From positions 249,709 through 313,708 of IMG/VR virus record IMGVR_UViG_3300002143_000235: 64,000 bases of DNA. One strand, written 5' to 3'. The notes beneath the pieces are model-generated. The model worked only from the letters and a program-made list of their open reading frames with translations. It did no database searches and was not told the origin of the DNA. Below, in pieces: positions 2,956-46,345 of this stretch; within the stretch, counting starts at the first letter, position 1; the number at the start of each line of letters is the position of its first letter. The position numbers and the translations under genes were made by a program.

Positions 2956-3550
2956 ATTTTATACCTTTTGCCTGGACCTAATTAGGTCCAGGCAAAAAAT
3001 CAAATCACTATTCTCTTTTTGGAAGATTTCTGCTGGTGATATTACAGGTTCGATTCCTGTCTTCTGTCTAAAAATTAATAAATGTATAAATATAACAGCC
3101 TACAAATATTTCTAAACGAGGAACGACAAAAAACACAAGACTTACTAATCGACAACAGCAACCACACCCGAATTACTGCTGAAATATTTGGATTATCTTT
3201 TAATGAATTTGTATCCAAATTTCTTACTGTAATTGATACTGCTCAACACAACAAAGAATTATGTGAAACATTTCATAAAATGAATGAATTACATGAAATG
3301 TTTGAAGATGAAGATAATAATATTCGTCAAATTGTTTTATCTGAAACAAACACGTTGGAAATTGCCTTGAATTTATTTAAAATGAAATCACGTCAACTTA
3401 TTTGGAATTCTTTTGTTAGTATTACAAAAATAAACAATGATGTCTTTATAGATGAACGTCAAGATGATATTGCTACAATTATTAAATTTTGGAACGACTG
3501 GAAGACTTTTTAAATTTTTAAAACACTATATAAAAGAAAATTCTTGAACT

Positions 3551-3934
3551 ATGTTCACAAAAATATCTGGCTATAAATTATCATTAAAAGAAAATTTTGA
3601 TTCAATTTTTAAAAGAACTGAGCAGGAAAAAATTGATTATCTTTTATCAAATACATCGACAAATGATTTATTATCTTTAAAGCAACAATTAAAAAATGAA
3701 TTAAATTTTGATTTTGTTTTTGAAAATTATGCTAAAGATGAATACGGTCAAAAACATTTAGTTATATATGGATCAACTGCTGAAAGTATTGCTGAAAATG
3801 ATAAATTATGTGAAATAGTCAATGTATGGGAAAAACAAAAAGGATTGACACAGACGATAGAATATAGTGGTAAACCAGATGAAGATGAATACGAGTATAT
3901 TGCAATTCGAATTAATCTTTTTCTTATAAAATAA
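3551..3934 (+). CDS. Putative internal head protein with CTS-like N-terminus
   Basis: N-terminus MFTKISGYKLSLKE shared with other acidic ORFs in the window. Confidence 0.45.
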   Translation: MFTKISGYKLSLKENFDSIFKRTEQEKIDYLLSNTSTNDLLSLKQQLKNELNFDFVFENYAKDEYGQKHLVIYGSTAESIAENDKLCEIVNVWEKQKGLTQTIEYSGKPDEDEYEYIAIRINLFLIK

Positions 3935-13636: not shown

Positions 13637-14928
13637 TTAATAATGATTTACAACAATATAAAAATTACAACAACCATGAGTGAAGAAAACAAATCACTCT
13701 TTATTACATCATTCAAAAACACTAAACGTGAAACTGGTGTTTGTTACGGTGCATATTTTGATGAAGATCCATGCATGGTGGGATTGTTTGCTACCAGTAA
13801 ACATATTGCATTCGCAATTACTGATATATACGTACTTGATGACGAGATGTTTATGGATATCAAAATATTATCAACATTCAATGGTAAGAAACTGAAAGAA
13901 CGCTTGCTTGGTAAACATGAATTTGGTGTAGATTTGCATACGGCAACATATGCCCAAATCACTGTAGATAAACAAGACATATCTACAGTCAGTAAATTTA
14001 TATCAATTAACATCAGCGAAACATATGTTGAAACTGATACAACATGTGGTGTCGTAGCTACAACCAGTACAATCAGTCAGGATCACTACGAACTCAAAGA
14101 ATCCGAATTAAACAATGTGGCATTTGATCCGTTTGAAAGCACTGATGATCTTGATATAAAGGCATTGGATTTTTTACAGATGAAATTAAATCTTGTGGAT
14201 ACGATGTATAACGCGTTCAAACGAGAAGATGATAAACCATATTTTCATCTTGATTTTTTACTACAAAAATACTTAGGTATGAGTCAGGCTGACATTGATA
14301 AGATGAAGAATACTGAAAAATAATTTACATGGGATGCATTTAGCATCCCATTTTTTTCTATCTTTGTAATATAAAACAATCAAATGAACCAAATAATTTC
14401 AAATAAACGCATGTGGGTGATTATGTCAAAAGATAGAACACTTATAGCAAAAGGAACAACGTATCGTCATTTAGTATCAGTGTCAAACAAAAGAGATGAG
14501 AAAAAAATCTTGACATATCGTTCTAAAGCTACTGCAGAAAATGCTTTTAAAAAATATGATTGGTTTTATGATACAGAATTAATTACAAATTATGATTCTA
14601 GTAAACCATTATCAGAATACTTAGAAGCTGTTGAGGTTTCGTTTAAAGTTGAAATTTTATAAATATGGAAACAATTTATCGTATGGAATTTGATTATGGT
14701 CGTATGGGATCATTATCTGGATTATTTATTGCAGAAAGTGATGAGATTGATACATTAATAACATCTGAACGCGAAATCAACTTTGGTGAAATTTTAGGTA
14801 AACATTCAGACGTATGTTGTTCACTAACTCGCAGTGATATTGATGTTATATCATCTGATCCCGCTGACATTGAGTTTTTTAAAAGACTTAATCTTCAAAC
14901 TGGTTATAATCCACTTGATTTCCTATCT

Positions 14929-14970
14929 GAAGAAGATTATGAAGAAGAAGATTATGAAGAAGAAGATTAT
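14929..14970 (+). repeat. 15-bp tandem repeat (EEEDY) inside ORF 14665-15342
   Basis: (GAA)GAAGAAGATTAT x3. Confidence 0.8.
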
Positions 14971-15331
14971 AACGATGAAGACAATGATATAGAAGACGAA
15001 CCTTCACCCGAAGAACAGTTGTTAAAAATACTTTCTGATGAAAATTATAATTCATTTCATAATCGTACAAAATATGAAAATCTTTTAACAAAATGTACCC
15101 AAGCAATTGAAAAGTACCCAATGTATGTTGGATTTAAACTGTTGATTATTGATGTCGAATGCCGACGTTTAGATTATGCAACGTTTGAATACTTAGAGAT
15201 GCAAAAGAAACCAAATGTTCTTAAACCATCTCATTGGACACCAGAGTGGATTGCAGAAAGAGAAATTGAATACAAACAACAATCAGAAAAACGTTGGGCA
15301 CAAAGTATTATTGATAAAGAAAAGTTATTGA

Positions 15332-15793
15332 ATGAAAATTAATGTACTCAGTAAAATAGAGTTTGAAGATCTCATGATCAACAAAAATATCGATGATTCT
15401 AATGTTGAATCGTTAGATACTATCATGTTCATTAGTATTCTCAATACAGATAGCGTTGGTGATAATATAGGTCATTTTAAACACAATCATAAAAATGTAT
15501 TGATTCTAAATTTTGATGATGTTGAATTTGATATTATTGATACTGATATAAAAGCTGTTGCTTTTACAGAAGAACAAGGACATCAATTGATGTCTTTTAT
15601 TGATAGCAACAAGGATAAAAATCAGTGTATAGTACATTGTTCTGCTGGTATTAGTAGATCAGGTGCTGTAGGAGCATTTATAAGCGATTACTTTAATCAA
15701 AGTTATGCAAGCTTTAAAAAAATTAATCCATACACTAAACCAAATCCTAGAGTCATGCGTATAATGAACAGAATTTTAAGACAAAAAGAATAA
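15332..15793 (+). CDS. Protein tyrosine/dual-specificity phosphatase-like protein (paralog of 13145-13636)
   Basis: VHCSAGISRSGA, LNFDD and KPNP. Confidence 0.85.
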   Translation: MKINVLSKIEFEDLMINKNIDDSNVESLDTIMFISILNTDSVGDNIGHFKHNHKNVLILNFDDVEFDIIDTDIKAVAFTEEQGHQLMSFIDSNKDKNQCIVHCSAGISRSGAVGAFISDYFNQSYASFKKINPYTKPNPRVMRIMNRILRQKE

Positions 15794-30608: not shown

Positions 30609-31349
30609 ATGATCACATCAATAAACGAATTTAAACAATACATCAACGAAACAATAGATGTAAAAGACTCAGCATTTGATAAATTTATTAGGACTAATGC
30701 AGATAAATTAGTAAATAGAACATCTAAATATTTGCCACAAATAAATAAATTATTTGCTGGCTCTGGGTTTATGGTAATAATTGATGATAATAATAGTAAA
30801 TATAAGTATAAAATTATTAATGCAGCTGGTGAAACAGTATTATCTTCACGTATGTTTAGAGATTTAATGGAAAAAATTAGAGATCTTGCTCGTCCTTATG
30901 CAACATTAAAACAATCACATACTAAAGAAACACCTACAGTATTAAATAATAACGGAACAACAAAAGTATCTGTAACAAAAACACCAGTATTAAATACAGA
31001 AATTATGTCTCTTGAAGATCTTAGTAATAATTTAGAAAATAAAAGTTATAAGTCTGGTCGTTTTGACATTGATTTTGATATACAAAAAACTGGTGATAAT
31101 ATTAGATTATTAATTGCTGCACATGGTAAACGCGGTTATCCTAGAGAAGCATATTTAAAAGCACTTAGCACACCATTACCAACATTACCAAATGGCTATG
31201 AATATGTCGATCGTAAACCAAAAGATTATACAGGTAATATTATGACTCCAACGTCAATAAAATCTGATGATGATAATTATGATGATCGTGGTTATATCGA
31301 TTCAGAATTTTCTGGTGTAGTCTATTACAATGTACAAAAAACATCATAA
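30609..31349 (+). CDS. Putative internal head protein with CTS-like N-terminus
   Basis: MITSINEFKQYINE. Confidence 0.45.
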   Translation: MITSINEFKQYINETIDVKDSAFDKFIRTNADKLVNRTSKYLPQINKLFAGSGFMVIIDDNNSKYKYKIINAAGETVLSSRMFRDLMEKIRDLARPYATLKQSHTKETPTVLNNNGTTKVSVTKTPVLNTEIMSLEDLSNNLENKSYKSGRFDIDFDIQKTGDNIRLLIAAHGKRGYPREAYLKALSTPLPTLPNGYEYVDRKPKDYTGNIMTPTSIKSDDDNYDDRGYIDSEFSGVVYYNVQKTS

Positions 31350-31784
31350 AGTTTTTTATATCAAATAAAAATATTACATTTGAAAAAATTAAAAAAATGA
31401 TATTTATTATAATCGCAATATTTTTAATAATAATATTTACATGTACTATTAACATATACAAAAAAATCAAAATAGTTGATGATAAAATGTGGAGTTATAT
31501 TGCTACTCCATGTGAAACAATATTCAATGTAACTAATTTTAATAATTGGTTTTGTGATCCAAACAATAATGCTGTTTATGCACATAGTGGTATTTATGGT
31601 CGCTGTGATAAATTAAGTATTGCGCATATTGAAGATTATATGCTTAAATGTTATGGAATAAATGATAAGGATAAAACTTTATGTCATGGTCATTCAAAAC
31701 AACAACTGATTGATGATTTTTATCAAGATATTAGAAAAGATTGGTTAAAATAAAAAAATATTTTTTTATTTGAAAAAATAGTTG

Positions 31785-31792
31785 TACATTTG
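31785..31792 (+). promoter_or_regulatory. Bacteroidota-type -7 promoter element for the leader/tRNA operon
   Basis: TACATTTG matches TAnnTTTG; the same motif is at 14359, 33898, 35591, 39324, 45361, 46463, 63161, 63940 (+) and 6056-6063 (-), each upstream of a gene start. Confidence 0.7.
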
Positions 31793-31829
31793 TCAAACAA
31801 AAGAAGAATTAAAACATATATAACGTATA

Positions 31830-31919
31830 ATGAAAACAATTACAAACATATCATCAAGCTCACGCAGCCGACGCTCGTCATCAAGACGTAGTGGATATGT
31901 ATTGTCTGAGGTTTTCTAA
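31830..31919 (+). CDS. Ser/Arg-rich attenuator leader peptide MKTITNISSSSRSRRSSSRRSGYVLSEVF (29 aa, absent from the ORF track)
   Basis: ATG at 31830, TAA at 31917-31919; codons 8-21 are all Ser or Arg. Confidence 0.85.
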   Translation: MKTITNISSSSRSRRSSSRRSGYVLSEVF

Positions 31920-31984
31920 CATTATAGAAAAATATTATCTCTTAGGAGATGTTAAAGCCTCAGATATTATCTGAGGCTTTTTTT
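31903..31984 (+). promoter_or_regulatory. Transcription attenuator (alternative antiterminator and terminator)
   Basis: Terminator AAAGCCTCAGATA/TATCTGAGGCTTT plus T-run (31954-31984); TGTCTGAGGTTTT (31903-31915) can pair with the same 5' arm (13 bp, 2 G-U). Confidence 0.85.
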
Positions 31985-31999
31985 ATTTAATAAAATTAT

Positions 32000-32089
32000 G
32001 GAAGATGAATCAGTCCGGCGACTGACCCTGTCTTGAAAACAGTGGGTTCCTCAGAGATGGGGGATTGGGATCGACACCTACTTCTTCCT
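32000..32089 (+). tRNA. tRNA-Ser(TGA)
   Basis: GGAAGA/TCTTCC acceptor, loop CTTGAAA, long variable arm; atypical T-loop ATCGACA. Confidence 0.8.
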
Positions 32090-32121
32090 CATTGACTTTT
32101 TAGTGAAACAAATATAAAAAT

Positions 32122-32206
32122 AGAGAGTAAACTTGAATGGCTCAAGGCTCGCCTGCTAAGCGATGCGTACCCGAAAGGGTATTTGGTTCGACTCCAATTC
32201 TCTCTA
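32122..32206 (+). tRNA. tRNA-Ser(GCT)
   Basis: AGAGAG/CTCTCT acceptor, loop CTGCTAA, variable arm TACCC-GAAA-GGGTA, T-loop TTCGACT. Confidence 0.85.
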
Positions 32207-32212
32207 CTTAAT

Positions 32213-32283
32213 GCCTGCTTAGTGTAATGGAAGCACATGTGGATTCTACCCACAGAGTGAGGGTTCAAGTCCTTCAGCGGGTA
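32213..32283 (+). tRNA. tRNA-Arg(TCT)
   Basis: TGTGG-ATTCTAC-CCACA anticodon arm; T-loop TTCAAGT. Confidence 0.85.
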
Positions 32284-32290
32284 CTAAAAT

Positions 32291-32365
32291 GCGCTTGTAG
32301 TTTAATTGGAAAAATACTCGGCTACGAACCGAGAGACGTGACGGGTTCGACTCCCTCCAGGCGTA
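32291..32365 (+). tRNA. tRNA-Arg(ACG)
   Basis: CTCGG-CTACGAA-CCGAG; T-loop TTCGACT. Confidence 0.9.
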
Positions 32366-32370
32366 CTTAA

Positions 32371-32442
32371 GTTTCTGTAGTTCAACGGATAGAATGACCG
32401 GTTTCGGCCCGGTTGATGTGGGTTCAAATCCCGCCAGGAACT
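32371..32442 (+). tRNA. tRNA-Arg(TCG)
   Basis: ACCGG-TTTCGGC-CCGGT; T-loop TTCAAAT. Confidence 0.88.
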
Positions 32443-32989
32443 CTTTAAATAGTTGTATTCGATTCAGACTGGTCGTTGAGTTCTTGATTCAAATTATAAT
32501 CCTTGATCTCATCGACCTTTGCCGGTCTTAAGTCTGTACCTTCTGTATTCACATTAGCAGCGACAATCGTATCAGTTGCTGGTTGTGTGGTTCCTGTATT
32601 AACATTCTCAGTTGGATCCAATTCATTAGTCTGACGAGGTTCAGAGAAGTTCACATTACCAATATCAGAAGGAACTGTGTATGTGTAAACATCCATCGGT
32701 ACGTAATCAAGTGTTACAGGTTTTTCAATAGCTGCTGGTGCATTATTAACTTTCTTTAATGATTGTGCAGTAACTATTGGTTTATTATCTGTTTTATCAT
32801 AAACATTACCACCAAGTAATGGTTTAACTACTGGTGTAATATTATTTATATTTCCAAGATGCTTATTATTTTCATTTGGTGTTGTAGGACCATTAATATT
32901 TCCCAACGGCTTATTAAACGTTGAAAGATTTACTAACTGTAAATCTTCTTTGTATACATTTGTTACTGATTTTACCTGTCGCTTAGCCA

Positions 32990-33844
32990 TTATACAATCT
33001 CTTCATTATTTTCAATATCACCTAATACCATGAGTTGATTTTGAAACCATTCAGAACATTCAGATGTAATTCGTGTTTTATTTAACGTATAGAAGTCTTT
33101 GATGTAACGTTTGATAATCTCACCTGAAACATTCAAACATTTTTTACGTTGACCATTCATTGAATCGATCATGATTATATCTGTTTCATTATCAGTAGGA
33201 TAATCAAGCATAGCAAAGAAATTGTTTTTGAATTCTAAATCGTTAACTGTATCATCATCAGTAAGAGCTTCTGAAACTTTTGATTTAGAAAGATCTAAGA
33301 TAGGATTTTTTACAATTGGTGTTCCTTTGTGTGTTTTTATTTTCTTACGTTGTTTAATGCGTTCTTTAGGCAGAATTTCAAGTCCAATTGCATTAGCTGG
33401 AAGTTTCTTTTGTACTTTCATTTTTGTAGCTGGTTTATCACCAGAACCAAATGATCCCATCATTCCTGGAGTTGAATTGATACCAGGCATAACAACCGCA
33501 CCCATTCCTGCAGTATTAGCTGGTCCTGCAAGTGATGCATCTTCAAAAATTGTGGTAACGTCTTGCTCTTTAGCAATACGATCAACAAGTGAACCGATTG
33601 CATTTCTGAGGGTACGCTCATCAATTTTACATTTTTTTACAAATGAATGTGGTGTAATATCTTTAATAAGGTTTTTTTCAATAGCAATAGTTCTATAGAT
33701 ATACTGCTCAACTTTTGGATTCTCTTTATAACGAACACGTACAACGATAATACTATCTTGTACTTCAGTCACATCAAAATACCATTTATTATTGAGAAAA
33801 AGTTGATCACCGGGAACCAATACGTTTGTTTCAGTTGAATTCAT
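32990..33844 (-). CDS. Hypothetical protein (possibly virion-associated)
   Basis: 284-aa ORF with an upstream AATATATAA element, coupled to 32445-32990. Confidence 0.4.
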   Translation of the reverse strand: MNSTETNVLVPGDQLFLNNKWYFDVTEVQDSIIVVRVRYKENPKVEQYIYRTIAIEKNLIKDITPHSFVKKCKIDERTLRNAIGSLVDRIAKEQDVTTIFEDASLAGPANTAGMGAVVMPGINSTPGMMGSFGSGDKPATKMKVQKKLPANAIGLEILPKERIKQRKKIKTHKGTPIVKNPILDLSKSKVSEALTDDDTVNDLEFKNNFFAMLDYPTDNETDIIMIDSMNGQRKKCLNVSGEIIKRYIKDFYTLNKTRITSECSEWFQNQLMVLGDIENNEEIV

Positions 33845-42280: not shown

Positions 42281-42354
42281 GGTCCTGTAGCTCAGTTGGT
42301 TAGAGCATTCGACTCATAATCGACAGGTCGTGGGTTCAAGTCCCTCCGGGACCA
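42281..42354 (+). tRNA. tRNA with CAT anticodon (Ile2 or elongator Met)
   Basis: Canonical cloverleaf GGTCCTG/CGGGACC, loop CTCATAA, T-loop TTCAAGT. Confidence 0.9.
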
Positions 42355-42660
42355 CAAAACTATTAAAATGTCTAAAATAGAACAAAAATATAGATTCAAA
42401 CCAACCGAAATGAATTTACGTTGGAAAGAAGGTCTTGCATTATATAATTTCAAAAATAATACAAATCATACATATGATCAGTTTTTGAATGAGCTTGTTG
42501 ATGAAGATTTCAATTCAGCGTTTGATAAATGTGTTGATGAAATTCATGCTTTTGATAATCTTTTAATAGAAGATTATCAAAAAGCAATGAAATTGAAAGA
42601 TTCTAAATATGCATGTCTTGATTCATATTTAGAACTTGTTGAAGATAAATACAATTAATT

Positions 42661-45268: not shown

Positions 45269-45391
45269 TTAAATTTAGATATTATTTATTGTGTATTAAG
45301 CAGTTTAAAAATAAATCAAAAATATTTTCATAAAATAACGTTTGATTTAAAAATAATGTGTATATTTGTATCACAATCAAACGAGATTGTA

Positions 45392-45466
45392 GATAAGGTA
45401 GTTTAAGATAAAACATCCATAGAAGCTTTAACGCAGGATTTAAAGGTGCAAGTCCTTTTCTTATTA
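45392..45466 (+). ncRNA. tRNA-like RNA with expanded anticodon loop
   Basis: GATAAGG/TCTTATT acceptor, D-arm, ATCC-17 nt-GGAT, AAAGG-TGCAAGT-CCTTT. Confidence 0.55.
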
Positions 45467-45572
45467 CATATAAGTTCTTTGAAACTTGACTAGAGACGGC
45501 AGAGTAGAGTAATTATGTTGGTAATAAGACTTCATAATGAAATGAATTGTCGTTTCTCAGTTCTAAAAAAAT

Positions 45573-45747
45573 GCGTAACTAAAAGACAGGTAGTTAGTAA
45601 ACTAGATAAAAAATTTCGAAGCGATCGATAGAAGCACAATATATTCTAGTATGAAAGCAAACAATGGTTGTGTATCCTGCGCCGAAACATTGATGGAGAA
45701 TTCTAAGTCAATGTGGAATTAAATGGGTTCGAGTCCCTAGTTACGCT
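45573..45747 (+). ncRNA. About 175-nt RNA with tRNA-like ends
   Basis: GCGTAAC/GTTACGC stem plus GGG-TTCGAGT-CCC T-arm. Confidence 0.55.
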
Positions 45748-45842
45748 CAATTTTGCCGCCAAAAGGAGAACCGTGAGTCTGAGGTGTAAAAACTGTACGA
45801 CGAGCATACGTCATACCTTGCGGCGCCAAAACATTAAAAATA

Positions 45843-45924
45843 TTCTTGTGGTGTAATTAGCACGGTCCACTAAGTGGGAGAAGTTTGGGTAGGCGATTAA
45901 CGCTATTTAAATCCCAACAAGAGC
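45843..45924 (+). ncRNA. Aberrant tRNA-like RNA
   Basis: TTCTTGT/ACAAGAG acceptor, GTG/CAC D-arm, CCAC-TAA-GTGG arm, hairpin inserted in the T-loop. Confidence 0.45.
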
Positions 45925-46181
45925 GGTATTCCAGGTTATCAATCTCCTTATGATTGGTTAGTTATGTCGGCACTAAAAGTTCGATCCTTGTTTAAAGTTT
46001 TTTATTGGTTAACAAAAACTACTTTATCTGTTCAATATGCGTGAACAGACGGTTTTATCTTAAACCGTATGCATAGATCGTTTAGTATATTAGCGTCAAA
46101 ATATACAGACATACTAAGATATGTAACATCGTTGTCACTATACGCACTATGGAAATGTGTTTAAAAATGATGACGATAAAT

Positions 46182-46267
46182 GCGGAGGTGGCGAAATTGA
46201 TTAACGTTTACGGACAAGTTTTCGTAGATGAAAAAATTCAATGTTGGTTTGAGTCCAACCCTCTGCA
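46182..46267 (+). tRNA. Degenerate Leu-like tRNA (non-canonical anticodon loop)
   Basis: GCGGAGG/CCTCTGC-A, TGGCGAAATTG D-region, GTTGG-TTTGAGT-CCAAC. Confidence 0.55.
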
Positions 46268-46274
46268 CTAAAAT

Positions 46275-46345
46275 ACAGGGTTAGTTTAAAGTTAAAACGC
46301 GGATCGTTGGGATCCGAGATGTTGGTTCAATTCCAATACGCTGTA
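46275..46345 (+). tRNA. Atypical tRNA (Pro/Gln-like anticodon arm)
   Basis: ACAGGGT/ACGCTGT-A, CGGATC-GTTGG-GATCCG, TTGG-TTCAATT-CCAA. Confidence 0.55.

What the first reader, a model, noticed from the sequence alone, without database searches (positions are those of the whole stretch)
31785..32442. Leader-peptide attenuator that appears to switch on a phage Ser/Arg tRNA operon when those codons are translated poorly
Seen: promoter TACATTTG, then a 29-aa ORF missed by the ORF track (31830-31919) whose codons 8-21 are TCA TCA AGC TCA CGC AGC CGA CGC TCG TCA TCA AGA CGT AGT. An intrinsic terminator follows (31954-31984); its 5' arm can alternatively pair with the last leader codons (31903-31915, 13 bp). 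Five tRNAs come next: Ser(TGA), Ser(GCT), Arg(TCT), Arg(ACG), Arg(TCG). Every codon in the tract is read by one of these tRNAs, every tRNA is represented, and TCT/TCC/CGG/AGG are absent from the tract. Established: this is the geometry of trp/his-type attenuators, where a ribosome reaching the stop masks the antiterminator strand and a stalled one frees it. Inference: the phage senses loss of functional Ser/Arg tRNAs (starvation or host anticodon nucleases) and transcribes replacements on demand. I know attenuators for amino-acid biosynthesis and synthetase operons, but not for a phage tRNA operon.
Basis: partly seen in the sequence, partly recalled or inferred. Interest (0 to 1): 0.95.

Follow-up and report, generated by a model that had tools for sequence, protein, structure and literature searches.

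The report
Leader-peptide attenuator for phage tRNA genes
A 29-codon mini-gene made almost only of serine and arginine codons, followed by a stop-transcription hairpin, sits in front of a phage's serine/arginine tRNA genes, and other phages of the same bacterial group have equivalent mini-genes that spell out whichever tRNAs lie downstream. This points to an undescribed way for phages to make tRNAs only when decoding is slow.

Summary
It is untested at the bench.

**In the window:**
- A Flavobacteriia-type promoter box lies at 31785-31792.
- A 29-codon ORF (31830-31919) follows. Codons 8-21 are all Ser or Arg.
- A strong intrinsic terminator lies at 31954-31987.
- Five tRNAs follow from 32000: Ser-UGA, Ser-GCU, Arg-UCU, Arg-ACG and Arg-UCG.
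- The last ORF codons (31903-31915) can form 13 bp with the terminator's 5' arm.

**In relatives:** The window comes from a 313.7-kb uncultured jumbo phage. Eight diverged relatives keep the same arrangement. In them the ORF's 3' end changes together with both terminator arms.

**In unrelated cultured phages:** Cellulophaga phi38:1 and Calle_1, Tenacibaculum Gundel_1 and Maribacter Panino have the same kind of leader before each tRNA sub-cluster. Each leader lists the amino acids of its own downstream tRNAs. In phi38:1, for example, 16 consecutive Tyr/Asn/Phe/Ser/Trp/Cys codons precede exactly those tRNAs.

**Most likely mechanism:** trp/his-type ribosome-mediated attenuation whose output is tRNA. 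Slow decoding of cognate codons would give read-through.

**Open or corrected points:**
- The physiological trigger is open: feedback, tRNA loss or starvation.

I found no earlier description. I rate it a new variant of a known kind.

The parts
31764..31792 (+). Promoter-like region. It ends in the Bacteroidota-type -7 box TACATTTG (31785-31792).
   Evidence: One search gives the position. Six of the nine relatives have a TAnnTTTG-like box at the same alignment position. The stretch GAAAAAATAGTTGTACATTTG closely resembles the AAAAAGTTGTATATTTG that precedes every tRNA leader in phi38:1, Calle_1 and Panino. The motif is not enriched in the window overall, so the promoter is inferred, not shown.
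31830..31919 (+). Leader ORF of 29 codons, ATG to TAA.
   Evidence: All 9 related loci keep an ATG, a length of 25-29 codons and a TAA stop. Only 1 of 49 long ORFs in the window has a Shine-Dalgarno-like motif, so its absence here is normal for this phage.
31851..31892 (+). Control tract of 14 consecutive Ser/Arg codons: TCA x5, AGC x2, TCG, AGT, CGC x2, CGA, AGA, CGT.
   Evidence: It is unique in the window and P is about 1e-13. By my own comparison of the codons printed (not a separate computation), differences between close relatives inside the tract are synonymous or stay within Ser/Arg, while flanking codons change freely.
31872..31893 (+). Small predicted hairpin inside the tract (core CGUC...GACG).
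   Evidence: minimum-energy fold. By eye, a CGTC/GACG-type inverted repeat recurs in relatives around the conserved AAGACG. Its role is unknown; a pause hairpin is my speculation.
31903..31915 (+). Antiterminator strand (region 2). It consists of the last ORF codons and mimics the terminator's 3' arm.
   Evidence: It forms 13 bp with 31954-31966 at -17.9 kcal/mol, against -14.6 for the terminator core. It co-varies with both terminator arms across relatives.
31936..31951 (+). Spacer hairpin between the stop codon and the terminator.
   Evidence: L181, L182 and L186 have a hairpin of different sequence at the same place. It would sit in the loop of the antiterminator helix.
31954..31987 (+). 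Intrinsic terminator: 5' arm 31954-31965, loop, 3' arm 31969-31980, T-run to 31987.
   Evidence: All 9 relatives have a terminator at the same position with a different sequence.
32000..32090 (+). tRNA-Ser, anticodon UGA.
   Evidence: Rfam 44.7 bits, E 2e-7; ARAGORN at relaxed threshold.
32122..32207 (+). tRNA-Ser, anticodon GCU.
   Evidence: (Rfam 43.6 bits, E 4e-8).
32213..32284 (+). tRNA-Arg, anticodon UCU.
32291..32366 (+). tRNA-Arg, anticodon ACG.
32371..32443 (+). tRNA-Arg, anticodon UCG.

Best explanation
This is a ribosome-mediated (leader-peptide) transcription attenuator that controls a phage tRNA operon.

Proposed steps:
1. Transcription starts at the promoter near 31785-31792 and the 29-codon leader is translated as it is made.
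2. If Ser and Arg codons are decoded quickly, the ribosome reaches the 3' end of the ORF and covers 31903-31915. The terminator hairpin 31954-31980 then forms and transcription stops before the tRNA genes.
3. If decoding is slow, the ribosome stalls inside the tract 31851-31892. This happens when too little charged Ser-UGA, Ser-GCU, Arg-UCU or Arg-ACG/UCG tRNA is available from host or phage.
4. The segment 31903-31915 then stays free and pairs with the terminator's 5' arm as soon as that arm is transcribed. The polymerase reads through into the five tRNA genes.

Because the output is the very tRNAs that the leader tests, the circuit is a negative feedback loop, an on-demand supply of decoding capacity.

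Shown by computation: the elements, their conservation, the co-variation of the alternative pairing, and the match between leader codons and downstream tRNAs across phages.

Inferred: that the leader is translated, that stalling gives read-through, and what the physiological trigger is.
For: 1. Anatomy in the window.

2. Conservation. I found relatives through a neighbouring 284-aa protein that is 36-49% identical. All 8 related loci long enough to include the tRNA cluster have an ATG...TAA leader of 25-29 codons with a Ser/Arg tract, then a terminator, then a cluster that starts with Ser-UGA. In L007 I identified that first Ser-UGA gene by eye only.

3. Coding signature, from my own comparison of the codons printed (not a separate computation). 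Changes inside the tract are synonymous or stay within Ser/Arg. Between L182 and L186, for example, they are TCA>TCG, CGC>CGT and AGT>AGC. Flanking codons change freely.

4. Three-way co-variation.
- The window has TCTGAGG in the ORF and the 3' arm, and CCTCAGA in the 5' arm.
- L181, L182 and L186 have TTTGAGG and CCTCAAA.
- The five other loci have CCTGGA in the ORF, CCAGG in the 5' arm and CTGG in the 3' arm.
- Leaders paired with terminators of their own group average -16.3 and -12.4 kcal/mol. Paired with the other group they average -6.4 and -3.4.
- In 6 of 9 loci no other window of the surrounding 2.9 kb pairs as well.

5. Folding snapshots. With a ribosome stalled in the tract and the 3' arm not yet made, the predicted fold contains the ORF-to-5'-arm helix in 9 of 9 loci. 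With the ribosome at the stop codon only the terminator forms.

6. No room for a separate promoter. The T-run ends 12 nt before the first tRNA, and no TANNTTTG lies on the + strand between 31793 and 32955.

7. Independent generalisation in cultured phages.
- phi38:1 has three leaders with the cores TDIRTKGVK, YNNFSWYSNCSFSSYN and LLHQEPLEQLRLP.
- The first precedes tRNAs Lys, Ile, Gly, Met, Asp, Thr, Val, Arg and Ile. The second precedes Tyr, Ser, Ser, Asn, Trp, Phe and Cys. The third precedes Pro, Glu, Gln, His, Leu and Arg.
- Panino, Gundel_1 and uncultured contigs behave the same way. One example is the core LYLSLSYSLLS before Tyr, Leu, Ser, Ser and Leu.
- Each of these leaders also has a terminator and an ORF-3'-end-to-5'-arm pairing.
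- Shuffling which tRNA set goes with which leader gives P = 4e-5. Within those cores, most codons are readable by the anticodons present.

8. Rare codons are enriched in the 9 Ser/Arg leaders, as in classical attenuators. TCG makes up 17 of 72 Ser codons against 3.7% genome-wide. CGC makes up 12 of 40 Arg codons against 6.6%.
Against: - There is no direct evidence of translation, stalling or conditional termination.
- In three relatives (L007, L188, L184) the antiterminator helix is short, 5-6 GC-rich bp at -10 to -12 kcal/mol, and it is not exceptional against local background.
- In full-length folds the terminator is thermodynamically preferred in all nine loci. Read-through would therefore have to be kinetic, as it is in trp.
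- An anti-antiterminator or pause hairpin is not clearly conserved.
- The codon-to-tRNA match is imperfect. L182 and L186 leaders carry CGY codons but their clusters lack Arg-ACG. TCT/TCC occur without a Ser-AGA or Ser-GGA gene. CGA/CGG do not track the presence of Arg-UCG.
- TANNTTTG is not enriched in the window.
- Other phages' tRNA clusters among the fetched loci show no such leader, so the device is confined to certain lineages.
Confidence: 0.74

Rival explanations
1. The architecture and mechanism are the same, but the signal that matters is amino-acid starvation (uncharged tRNA), as in biosynthetic operons, rather than tRNA abundance or integrity.
For: The geometry is that of trp/his attenuators, which respond to charged-tRNA levels. 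Stalling cannot tell a missing tRNA from an uncharged one.
Against: Making more tRNA does not relieve amino-acid starvation. Leaders in cultured phages list 5-8 different amino acids that share nothing except the downstream tRNA set. That fits tRNA supply, not a metabolic pathway.
Confidence: 0.1
2. The small ORF encodes a functional Ser/Arg-rich peptide that acts in trans, for example by binding RNA. The terminator merely ends its transcript, and the tRNAs are made by constitutive leak-through.
For: Arginine-rich peptides can bind RNA hairpins (my own knowledge, for example lambda N). The ORF is conserved in 9 loci.
Against: - The C-terminal residues fall into unrelated classes (...VLFEVF...LLPG......FLEIK) that follow the RNA pairing, not a protein motif.
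- The order of Ser and Arg residues is not conserved.
- Analogous leaders in other phages have entirely different compositions set by their tRNA sets.
Confidence: 0.05
3. Sensing happens at the RNA level without a ribosome. The run of codons in the leader RNA pairs directly with tRNA anticodons (T-box-like) to stabilise one of the two structures.
For: The leader lists triplets complementary to the downstream anticodons.
Against: - No T-box or other Rfam family matches. The best leader-type hit is Phe_leader at 29.3 bits against a gathering score of 55, and it covers only the terminator.
- The triplets are always in frame with a conserved ATG and TAA.
- Changes are at third codon positions (my comparison of the codons).
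- No conserved specifier-loop architecture is present.
Confidence: 0.04
4. It is chance or ordinary: a spurious ORF next to an ordinary terminator that ends the upstream gene 31397-31753.
For: Short ORFs and AT-rich promoter-like boxes are common in a window with 31% G+C. The absence of TCT/TCC is only P about 0.05.
Against: - The probability of the Ser/Arg run is about 1e-13.
- The arrangement is conserved with co-variation in 8 diverged relatives.
- It recurs with matching codon lists in unrelated phages.
Confidence: 0.02

Closest known systems
Leader-peptide transcription attenuators of amino-acid biosynthetic operons (E. coli trpL, hisL, leuL, thrL, pheL, ilv leaders)
   Same: A short translated ORF carries a run of regulatory codons, with rare codons preferred as in leuL. 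An intrinsic terminator follows. An alternative antiterminator helix has its upstream strand masked by a ribosome that finishes the ORF. Stalling gives read-through.
   Different: - The regulated genes are tRNA genes, not enzymes.
- The element is in a phage.
- The codons of two amino acids (up to eight in sister elements) are listed according to the downstream tRNA set.
- The antiterminator strand lies inside the ORF, just before the stop codon.
- A 1:2 anti-antiterminator is not evident.
- There is no sequence similarity to Rfam leader families.
pheST (phenylalanyl-tRNA synthetase) attenuator with the pheM leader peptide
   Same: Leader-peptide attenuation is applied to a component of the translation apparatus, sensed through cognate codons (my own knowledge).
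   Different: The output there is the synthetase, so the loop acts on charging. Here the output is the tRNA itself. pheM is a single-amino-acid leader in a bacterial chromosome.
T-box riboswitches
   Same: Conditional termination is linked to the state of specific tRNAs, with a mutually exclusive terminator and antiterminator.
   Different: T-boxes bind uncharged tRNA directly through a specifier codon and a conserved T-box sequence, without a ribosome or an ORF. No T-box match was found. They regulate synthetase and amino-acid genes, not tRNA genes.
Polycysteine leaderless short ORFs acting as cysteine-responsive attenuators in mycobacteria (bioRxiv 10.1101/834739, seen)
   Same: Short ORFs at or near the 5' end of the transcript use runs of one kind of codon to control downstream operon expression. 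The cultured-phage leaders here also appear to be leaderless or nearly so, with the promoter box 4 nt before the ATG.
   Different: Those control cysteine-metabolism genes in a bacterium and respond to one amino acid. These precede tRNA genes in phages.
Phage-encoded tRNAs as codon compensation or as counter-measures to tRNA-targeting host defences (eLife 2023, PMC10264068)
   Same: The gene class is the same. An on-demand switch would fit both proposed uses of phage tRNAs.
   Different: That work concerns why phages carry tRNAs and how their anticodon loops escape nucleases. It does not describe regulation of the tRNA genes by leader peptides.

Membership tests
Ribosome-mediated (leader-peptide) transcription attenuators | A short ORF with start and stop codons lies directly upstream of the regulated genes on the same strand. 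| tested here: met
   The ORF is at 31830-31919. All 9 related loci keep an ATG and a TAA.
Ribosome-mediated (leader-peptide) transcription attenuators | The ORF contains a cluster of codons cognate to what is regulated. | tested here: met
   All 14 tract codons are Ser or Arg, before Ser and Arg tRNA genes. The codon list follows the tRNA set in other phages.
Ribosome-mediated (leader-peptide) transcription attenuators | An intrinsic terminator lies between the leader ORF and the regulated genes. | tested here: met
   A 12-bp stem plus T-run lies at 31954-31987. It is present in all relatives.
Ribosome-mediated (leader-peptide) transcription attenuators | An antiterminator helix excludes the terminator, and its upstream strand is covered by a ribosome that completes the ORF. 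| tested here: met
   The helix has 13 bp and shares 12 nucleotides of the 5' arm with the terminator. It co-varies across loci. Folding snapshots agree. It is weak in 3 of 9 relatives.
Ribosome-mediated (leader-peptide) transcription attenuators | An anti-antiterminator or pause hairpin (1:2) enforces termination without translation and synchronises the ribosome with the polymerase. | tested here: inconclusive
   In the window the fold pairs 31842-31852 with 31894-31905, and GAAAAC at the start with GUUUUC at the ORF's end. RNAalifold on the 9-sequence alignment gave no consensus structure. I did not see this pairing clearly in the CCTGGA-type relatives.
Ribosome-mediated (leader-peptide) transcription attenuators | The leader is translated, and read-through depends on stalling at the regulatory codons. 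| not testable with these tools
   This needs Ribo-seq, Term-seq or reporter assays.
Ribosome-mediated (leader-peptide) transcription attenuators | The regulated genes encode amino-acid biosynthesis, transport or aminoacyl-tRNA synthetase functions. This is the scope of all described members known to me. | tested here: not met
   The downstream genes are five tRNA genes. For this reason I file it as a new variant, not an ordinary member.
T-box riboswitch | The conserved T-box sequence and specifier-loop architecture are detectable with the Rfam model. | tested here: not met
   No T-box hit at E <= 1 in 31300-32800.
Rfam Phe_leader (RF01859) | The match reaches the family's gathering score. | tested here: not met
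   The score is 29.3 bits against a gathering score of 55, and only the terminator hairpin aligns.

The most novel reading that the evidence does not exclude
Phages of Flavobacteriia carry a general, previously unrecognised class of regulator. Each tRNA operon is preceded by its own leader peptide whose codons enumerate the operon's tRNAs, so transcription of the tRNA genes is switched on only when any of those codons is decoded slowly. That would make phage tRNA supply a self-adjusting, host-dependent response. The conditions sensed could be a poor match to the host tRNA pool, host tRNA decay, or cleavage by defence nucleases. The window's Ser/Arg element is one member of this class.
Probability: 0.65. 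Interest if true: 0.92.

Novelty: new variant of a known kind. Interest (0 to 1): 0.88.

Why it matters
Why phages carry tRNA genes has been debated for decades. The proposals include codon compensation, replacement of degraded host tRNAs and escape from tRNA-cleaving defences (context: PMC10264068). How those genes are regulated is essentially unknown.

If this reading is right, it matters for three reasons:
- A leader that tests the very codons served by the downstream tRNAs would show that some phages measure decoding capacity and supply tRNAs on demand.
- It would extend classical attenuation from metabolism to the translation machinery's adaptor molecules.
- It would provide a compact, modular sensor of codon-specific translation speed.

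It is directly testable. The same device is present in cultured phage-host pairs: Cellulophaga baltica with phi38:1, Cellulophaga with Calle_1, Tenacibaculum with Gundel_1, and Maribacter halichondriae with Panino. According to PMC5335546, phi38:1 uses the host RNA polymerase, and infection transcriptomes already exist for it.

Tried and rejected
1. DNA search of the window's leader region against cultured phages found only a tRNA match and a promoter-like match.

2. A three-block DNA pattern built from the first three leaders was run on viral, metagenome and genome collections. After filtering it returned only the same three phages plus chance hits.

3. A profile of the 284-aa neighbour protein run on viral contigs gave no new loci. 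The large protein database plus contig look-ups did.

4. RNAalifold on MAFFT alignments gave no consensus structure, because the terminators were out of register. I replaced it with per-locus duplex and hairpin calculations.

5. TANNTTTG enrichment in the window was not significant.

6. Fine-scale co-variation was not clean. I tested CGA/CGG against the presence of Arg-UCG, TCT against Ser-AGA, and CGY against Arg-ACG.

7. Pfam found nothing for the neighbouring genes.

8. The window's other tRNA genes (42281; 45392-46345) have no comparable leader.

9. Tenacibaculum phage pT24 matched only through the promoter.

10. Nine literature searches found no description of leader-peptide control of tRNA genes.
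Full report
**Source and setting**

The window is part of IMGVR_UViG_3300002143_000235, a 313.7-kb uncultured phage contig. It has 31% G+C. Only 1 of 49 long ORFs has a Shine-Dalgarno-like motif upstream. Its few DNA matches among cultured phages are to phages of Flavobacteriia. The host is therefore probably a member of the Bacteroidota. That is an inference.

**Check of the observation**

- TACATTTG lies at 31785-31792.
- The 29-codon ORF lies at 31830-31919, and codons 8-21 are the 14 listed Ser/Arg codons.
- The terminator has a 12-bp stem at 31954-31980 followed by a T-run.
- The last ORF codons form 13 bp with the terminator's 5' arm at -17.9 kcal/mol. None of 553 other local windows pairs as well.
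- ARAGORN at default settings reports only the three Arg tRNAs.
- The two Ser tRNAs have long variable arms. They score 44.7 and 43.6 bits on Rfam's long-arm model with E about 1e-7. ARAGORN calls them Ser-UGA and Ser-GCU at a relaxed threshold.

Ser plus Arg make up 9.7% of the phage's codons. No other all-Ser/Arg 14-codon window exists in any of the six frames, and the run has a probability of about 1e-13. The absence of TCT/TCC from the tract is only marginal, at P about 0.05.

**Relatives of this phage**

A neighbouring 284-aa protein (window 32990-33844, minus strand) led to two other IMG/VR phages. Through the large protein database and contig look-ups it led to six more loci. These proteins are 36-49% identical to the window's, so the phages are well diverged.

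Every locus long enough to contain the tRNA cluster has the same unit:
- an ATG...TAA ORF of 25-29 codons with a central Ser/Arg tract;
- a terminator;
- 63-114 nt after the stop codon, a cluster that begins with tRNA-Ser(UGA) and contains Arg-UCU and Ser-GCU. In L007 I identified the first Ser-UGA gene by eye only.

Arg-ACG is present in 7 of the 9 clusters.

From my comparison of the codons printed, differences between close relatives inside the tract are synonymous or stay within Ser/Arg. Between L182 and L186 they are TCA>TCG, CGC>CGT and AGT>AGC. Codons on either side change freely. This is the signature of a translated, codon-constrained stretch.

The rare codons TCG and CGC are strongly over-represented in the nine leaders. 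This parallels the rare control codons of leuL, which I know from the literature rather than from a test here.

**Alternative pairing co-varies**

The 3' ends of the leaders fall into two types.
- In the window, L181, L182 and L186 the ORF ends ...TTG TYT GAG GTT TTC TAA, and the terminator arms are CCTCARA and TYTGAGG. The window's C pairs with G. The other three loci have T in both the ORF and the 3' arm, and A in the 5' arm.
- In L007, L008, L183, L184 and L188 the ORF carries CCTGGA, and the arms carry CCAGG and CTGG.

Leaders pair well with terminators of their own type (means -16.3 and -12.4 kcal/mol) and poorly with the other type (-6.4 and -3.4). The ORF segment uses the same 5'-arm nucleotides as the terminator.

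The folding snapshots agree with the model. When the RNA is folded with a ribosome stalled in the tract and the 3' arm not yet transcribed, the ORF-to-5'-arm helix appears in all nine loci. With the ribosome at the stop codon only the terminator forms.

There are two caveats:
- In L007, L188 and L184 the helix is only 5-6 GC-rich bp.
- In complete transcripts the terminator is always the more stable structure. Read-through would therefore be kinetic, as it is in trp.

**No separate promoter for the tRNAs**

The T-run ends 12 nt before the first tRNA. No TANNTTTG lies on the + strand between 31793 and 32955. The tRNAs must therefore be transcribed through the terminator.

The promoter call itself rests on two things. 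A similar box is conserved in 6 of 9 relatives. The sequence also resembles the AAAAAGTTGTATATTTG that precedes the analogous leaders of cultured phages. The bare motif is not enriched in the window.

**The unexpected generalisation**

One weak DNA hit led to Maribacter phage Panino. Panino's tRNA clusters are preceded by small ORFs unrelated in sequence to the window's leader:
- A leader with the core QRLHQELEQP precedes tRNAs Pro, Glu, Gln, His, Leu, Leu and Arg.
- A leader rich in Ala, Gly, Ile and Lys precedes tRNAs Ala, Lys, Ile and Gly.

Panino's relatives show the same arrangement. Cellulophaga phages phi38:1 and Calle_1 each have three units:

| Leader core | Downstream tRNAs |
|---|---|
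| TDIRTKGVK | Lys, Ile, Gly, Met, Asp, Thr, Val, Arg, Ile |
| YNNFSWYSNCSFSSYN | Tyr, Ser, Ser, Asn, Trp, Phe, Cys |
| LLHQEPLEQLRLP | Pro, Glu, Gln, His, Leu, Arg |

Tenacibaculum phage Gundel_1 has two units. In its second, an HNH endonuclease gene has been inserted between the attenuator and the tRNAs.

Each unit has a terminator and an ORF-3'-end segment complementary to the terminator's 5' arm. Within those cores, most codons are readable by the anticodons present under standard wobble rules.

The run probabilities range from 1e-2 to 4e-9. Shuffling which tRNA set belongs to which leader gives P = 4e-5.

A scan of IMG/VR with the promoter-plus-ATGAAAACA pattern added new combinations. One is the core LYLSLSYSLLS before Tyr, Leu, Ser, Ser and Leu.

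In a small census of 42 tRNA clusters among all fetched loci, runs of 10 or more appeared four times. With mismatched tRNA sets they appeared once in about 800 trials. Clusters of other phage types lacked leaders, so the device is confined to certain lineages.

The window's leader shares three features with these: the promoter type, the MKT start and a GAGG-T/A-TTTCT-like 3' segment. It probably belongs to the same family. That is an inference.

**Mechanism**

The best-supported reading is classical ribosome-mediated attenuation with a new output.
- Fast decoding of the listed codons lets the ribosome cover the antiterminator strand, and transcription terminates.
- Slow decoding leaves that strand free, and the tRNA genes are transcribed.

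Because the products are the tRNAs being tested, the loop is self-limiting. Leaders that list 5-8 unrelated amino acids make tRNA supply a more sensible signal than starvation for an amino acid. The data cannot distinguish simple feedback, mismatch with a host's tRNA pool, or loss of host tRNAs to decay or defence nucleases.

I considered three other readings and rated them low, for the reasons given under rivals: a trans-acting peptide, ribosome-free tRNA pairing, and chance.

**Comparison with known systems and novelty**

Four of the defining structural features of leader-peptide attenuators are met computationally. The pause/anti-antiterminator element is inconclusive, and translation-dependence cannot be tested here. 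The usual target class (biosynthesis or synthetase genes) is not met. There is no T-box, and no Rfam leader family matches.

Nine full-text searches found no report of leader-peptide control of tRNA genes in phages or bacteria. The papers that describe phi38:1, Calle and Gundel mention only tRNA counts or host tRNA expression. I did not read the Panino paper found. The library is incomplete, so prior description elsewhere cannot be excluded.

I rate the finding a new variant of a known kind, with high interest because cultured systems allow immediate tests.

Noticed in passing
L193 (Maribacter phage Panino PP540027.1) 1799-1879 and 2820-2894; L194 (Cellulophaga phage phi38:1 NC_021796.1) 819-896, 2280-2369, 3523-3612; L195 (Calle_1) same three; L196 (Tenacibaculum phage Gundel_1 NC_062747.1) 2875-2937 and about 3526-3597: Cultured Flavobacteriia phages have a short ORF plus terminator before each tRNA sub-cluster. 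The ORF's central codons list the amino acids of the downstream tRNAs. Several of these ORFs are unannotated, or are annotated only as hypothetical proteins from a wrong start.
   Followed up: yes
L194/L195/L193/L196, the 20-30 nt before each leader ATG; window 31764-31792: A strongly conserved promoter-like sequence (AAAAAGTTGTATATTT[G/A]) lies only 4 nt before the ATG in most cultured-phage leaders. This suggests leaderless or nearly leaderless leader mRNAs. In the window the same kind of box is 37 nt before the ATG.
   Followed up: partly
L183 6822-7664 (minus strand); L182 2173-3012 (minus strand); L186 5047-5889 (minus strand); L196 3730-4236: Protein genes are inserted inside or just before the tRNA clusters in some relatives. 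One has weak RAP / restriction-endonuclease-like Pfam hits, and Gundel_1 has an annotated HNH endonuclease. They are probably selfish endonuclease insertions that would be transcribed through the attenuator.
   Followed up: partly
window 45392-45466 and 46182-46267: Two further tRNA-like genes pass Rfam's tRNA threshold (34.9 and 34 bits), but ARAGORN calls them oddly: Tyr with anticodon ATA only at the relaxed threshold, and a gene with a two-base anticodon. TATATTTG lies at 45361-45368, just upstream of the first. No leader ORF is evident.
   Followed up: partly
window 42281-42355: tRNA-Met(CAT) follows an upstream ORF's stop codon by 7 nt. It is followed 14 nt later by the next ORF's ATG, with no leader or terminator. 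Not all tRNAs of this phage are under the leader device.
   Followed up: partly
window, all long ORFs: Only 1 of 49 ORFs of at least 150 aa has a Shine-Dalgarno-like 4-mer at -20 to -4, and the upstream regions are A-rich. This fits Bacteroidota-type translation initiation.
   Followed up: yes
window about 14950-15000 (seen as a run of Ser codons with stops on the minus strand): A short repetitive stretch lies inside the ORF 14665-15342. It was the only other place with many Ser/Arg codons in any frame, and there it is interrupted by stop codons.
   Followed up: no
L182 1996-2077 (minus strand): One relative carries a tRNA-Leu(CAG) inside the Ser/Arg cluster. Its leader has Leu codons (TTA and TTG) only outside the control tract and no CTG, the codon this tRNA reads. 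Gene content of the operon can therefore drift ahead of the leader.
   Followed up: no
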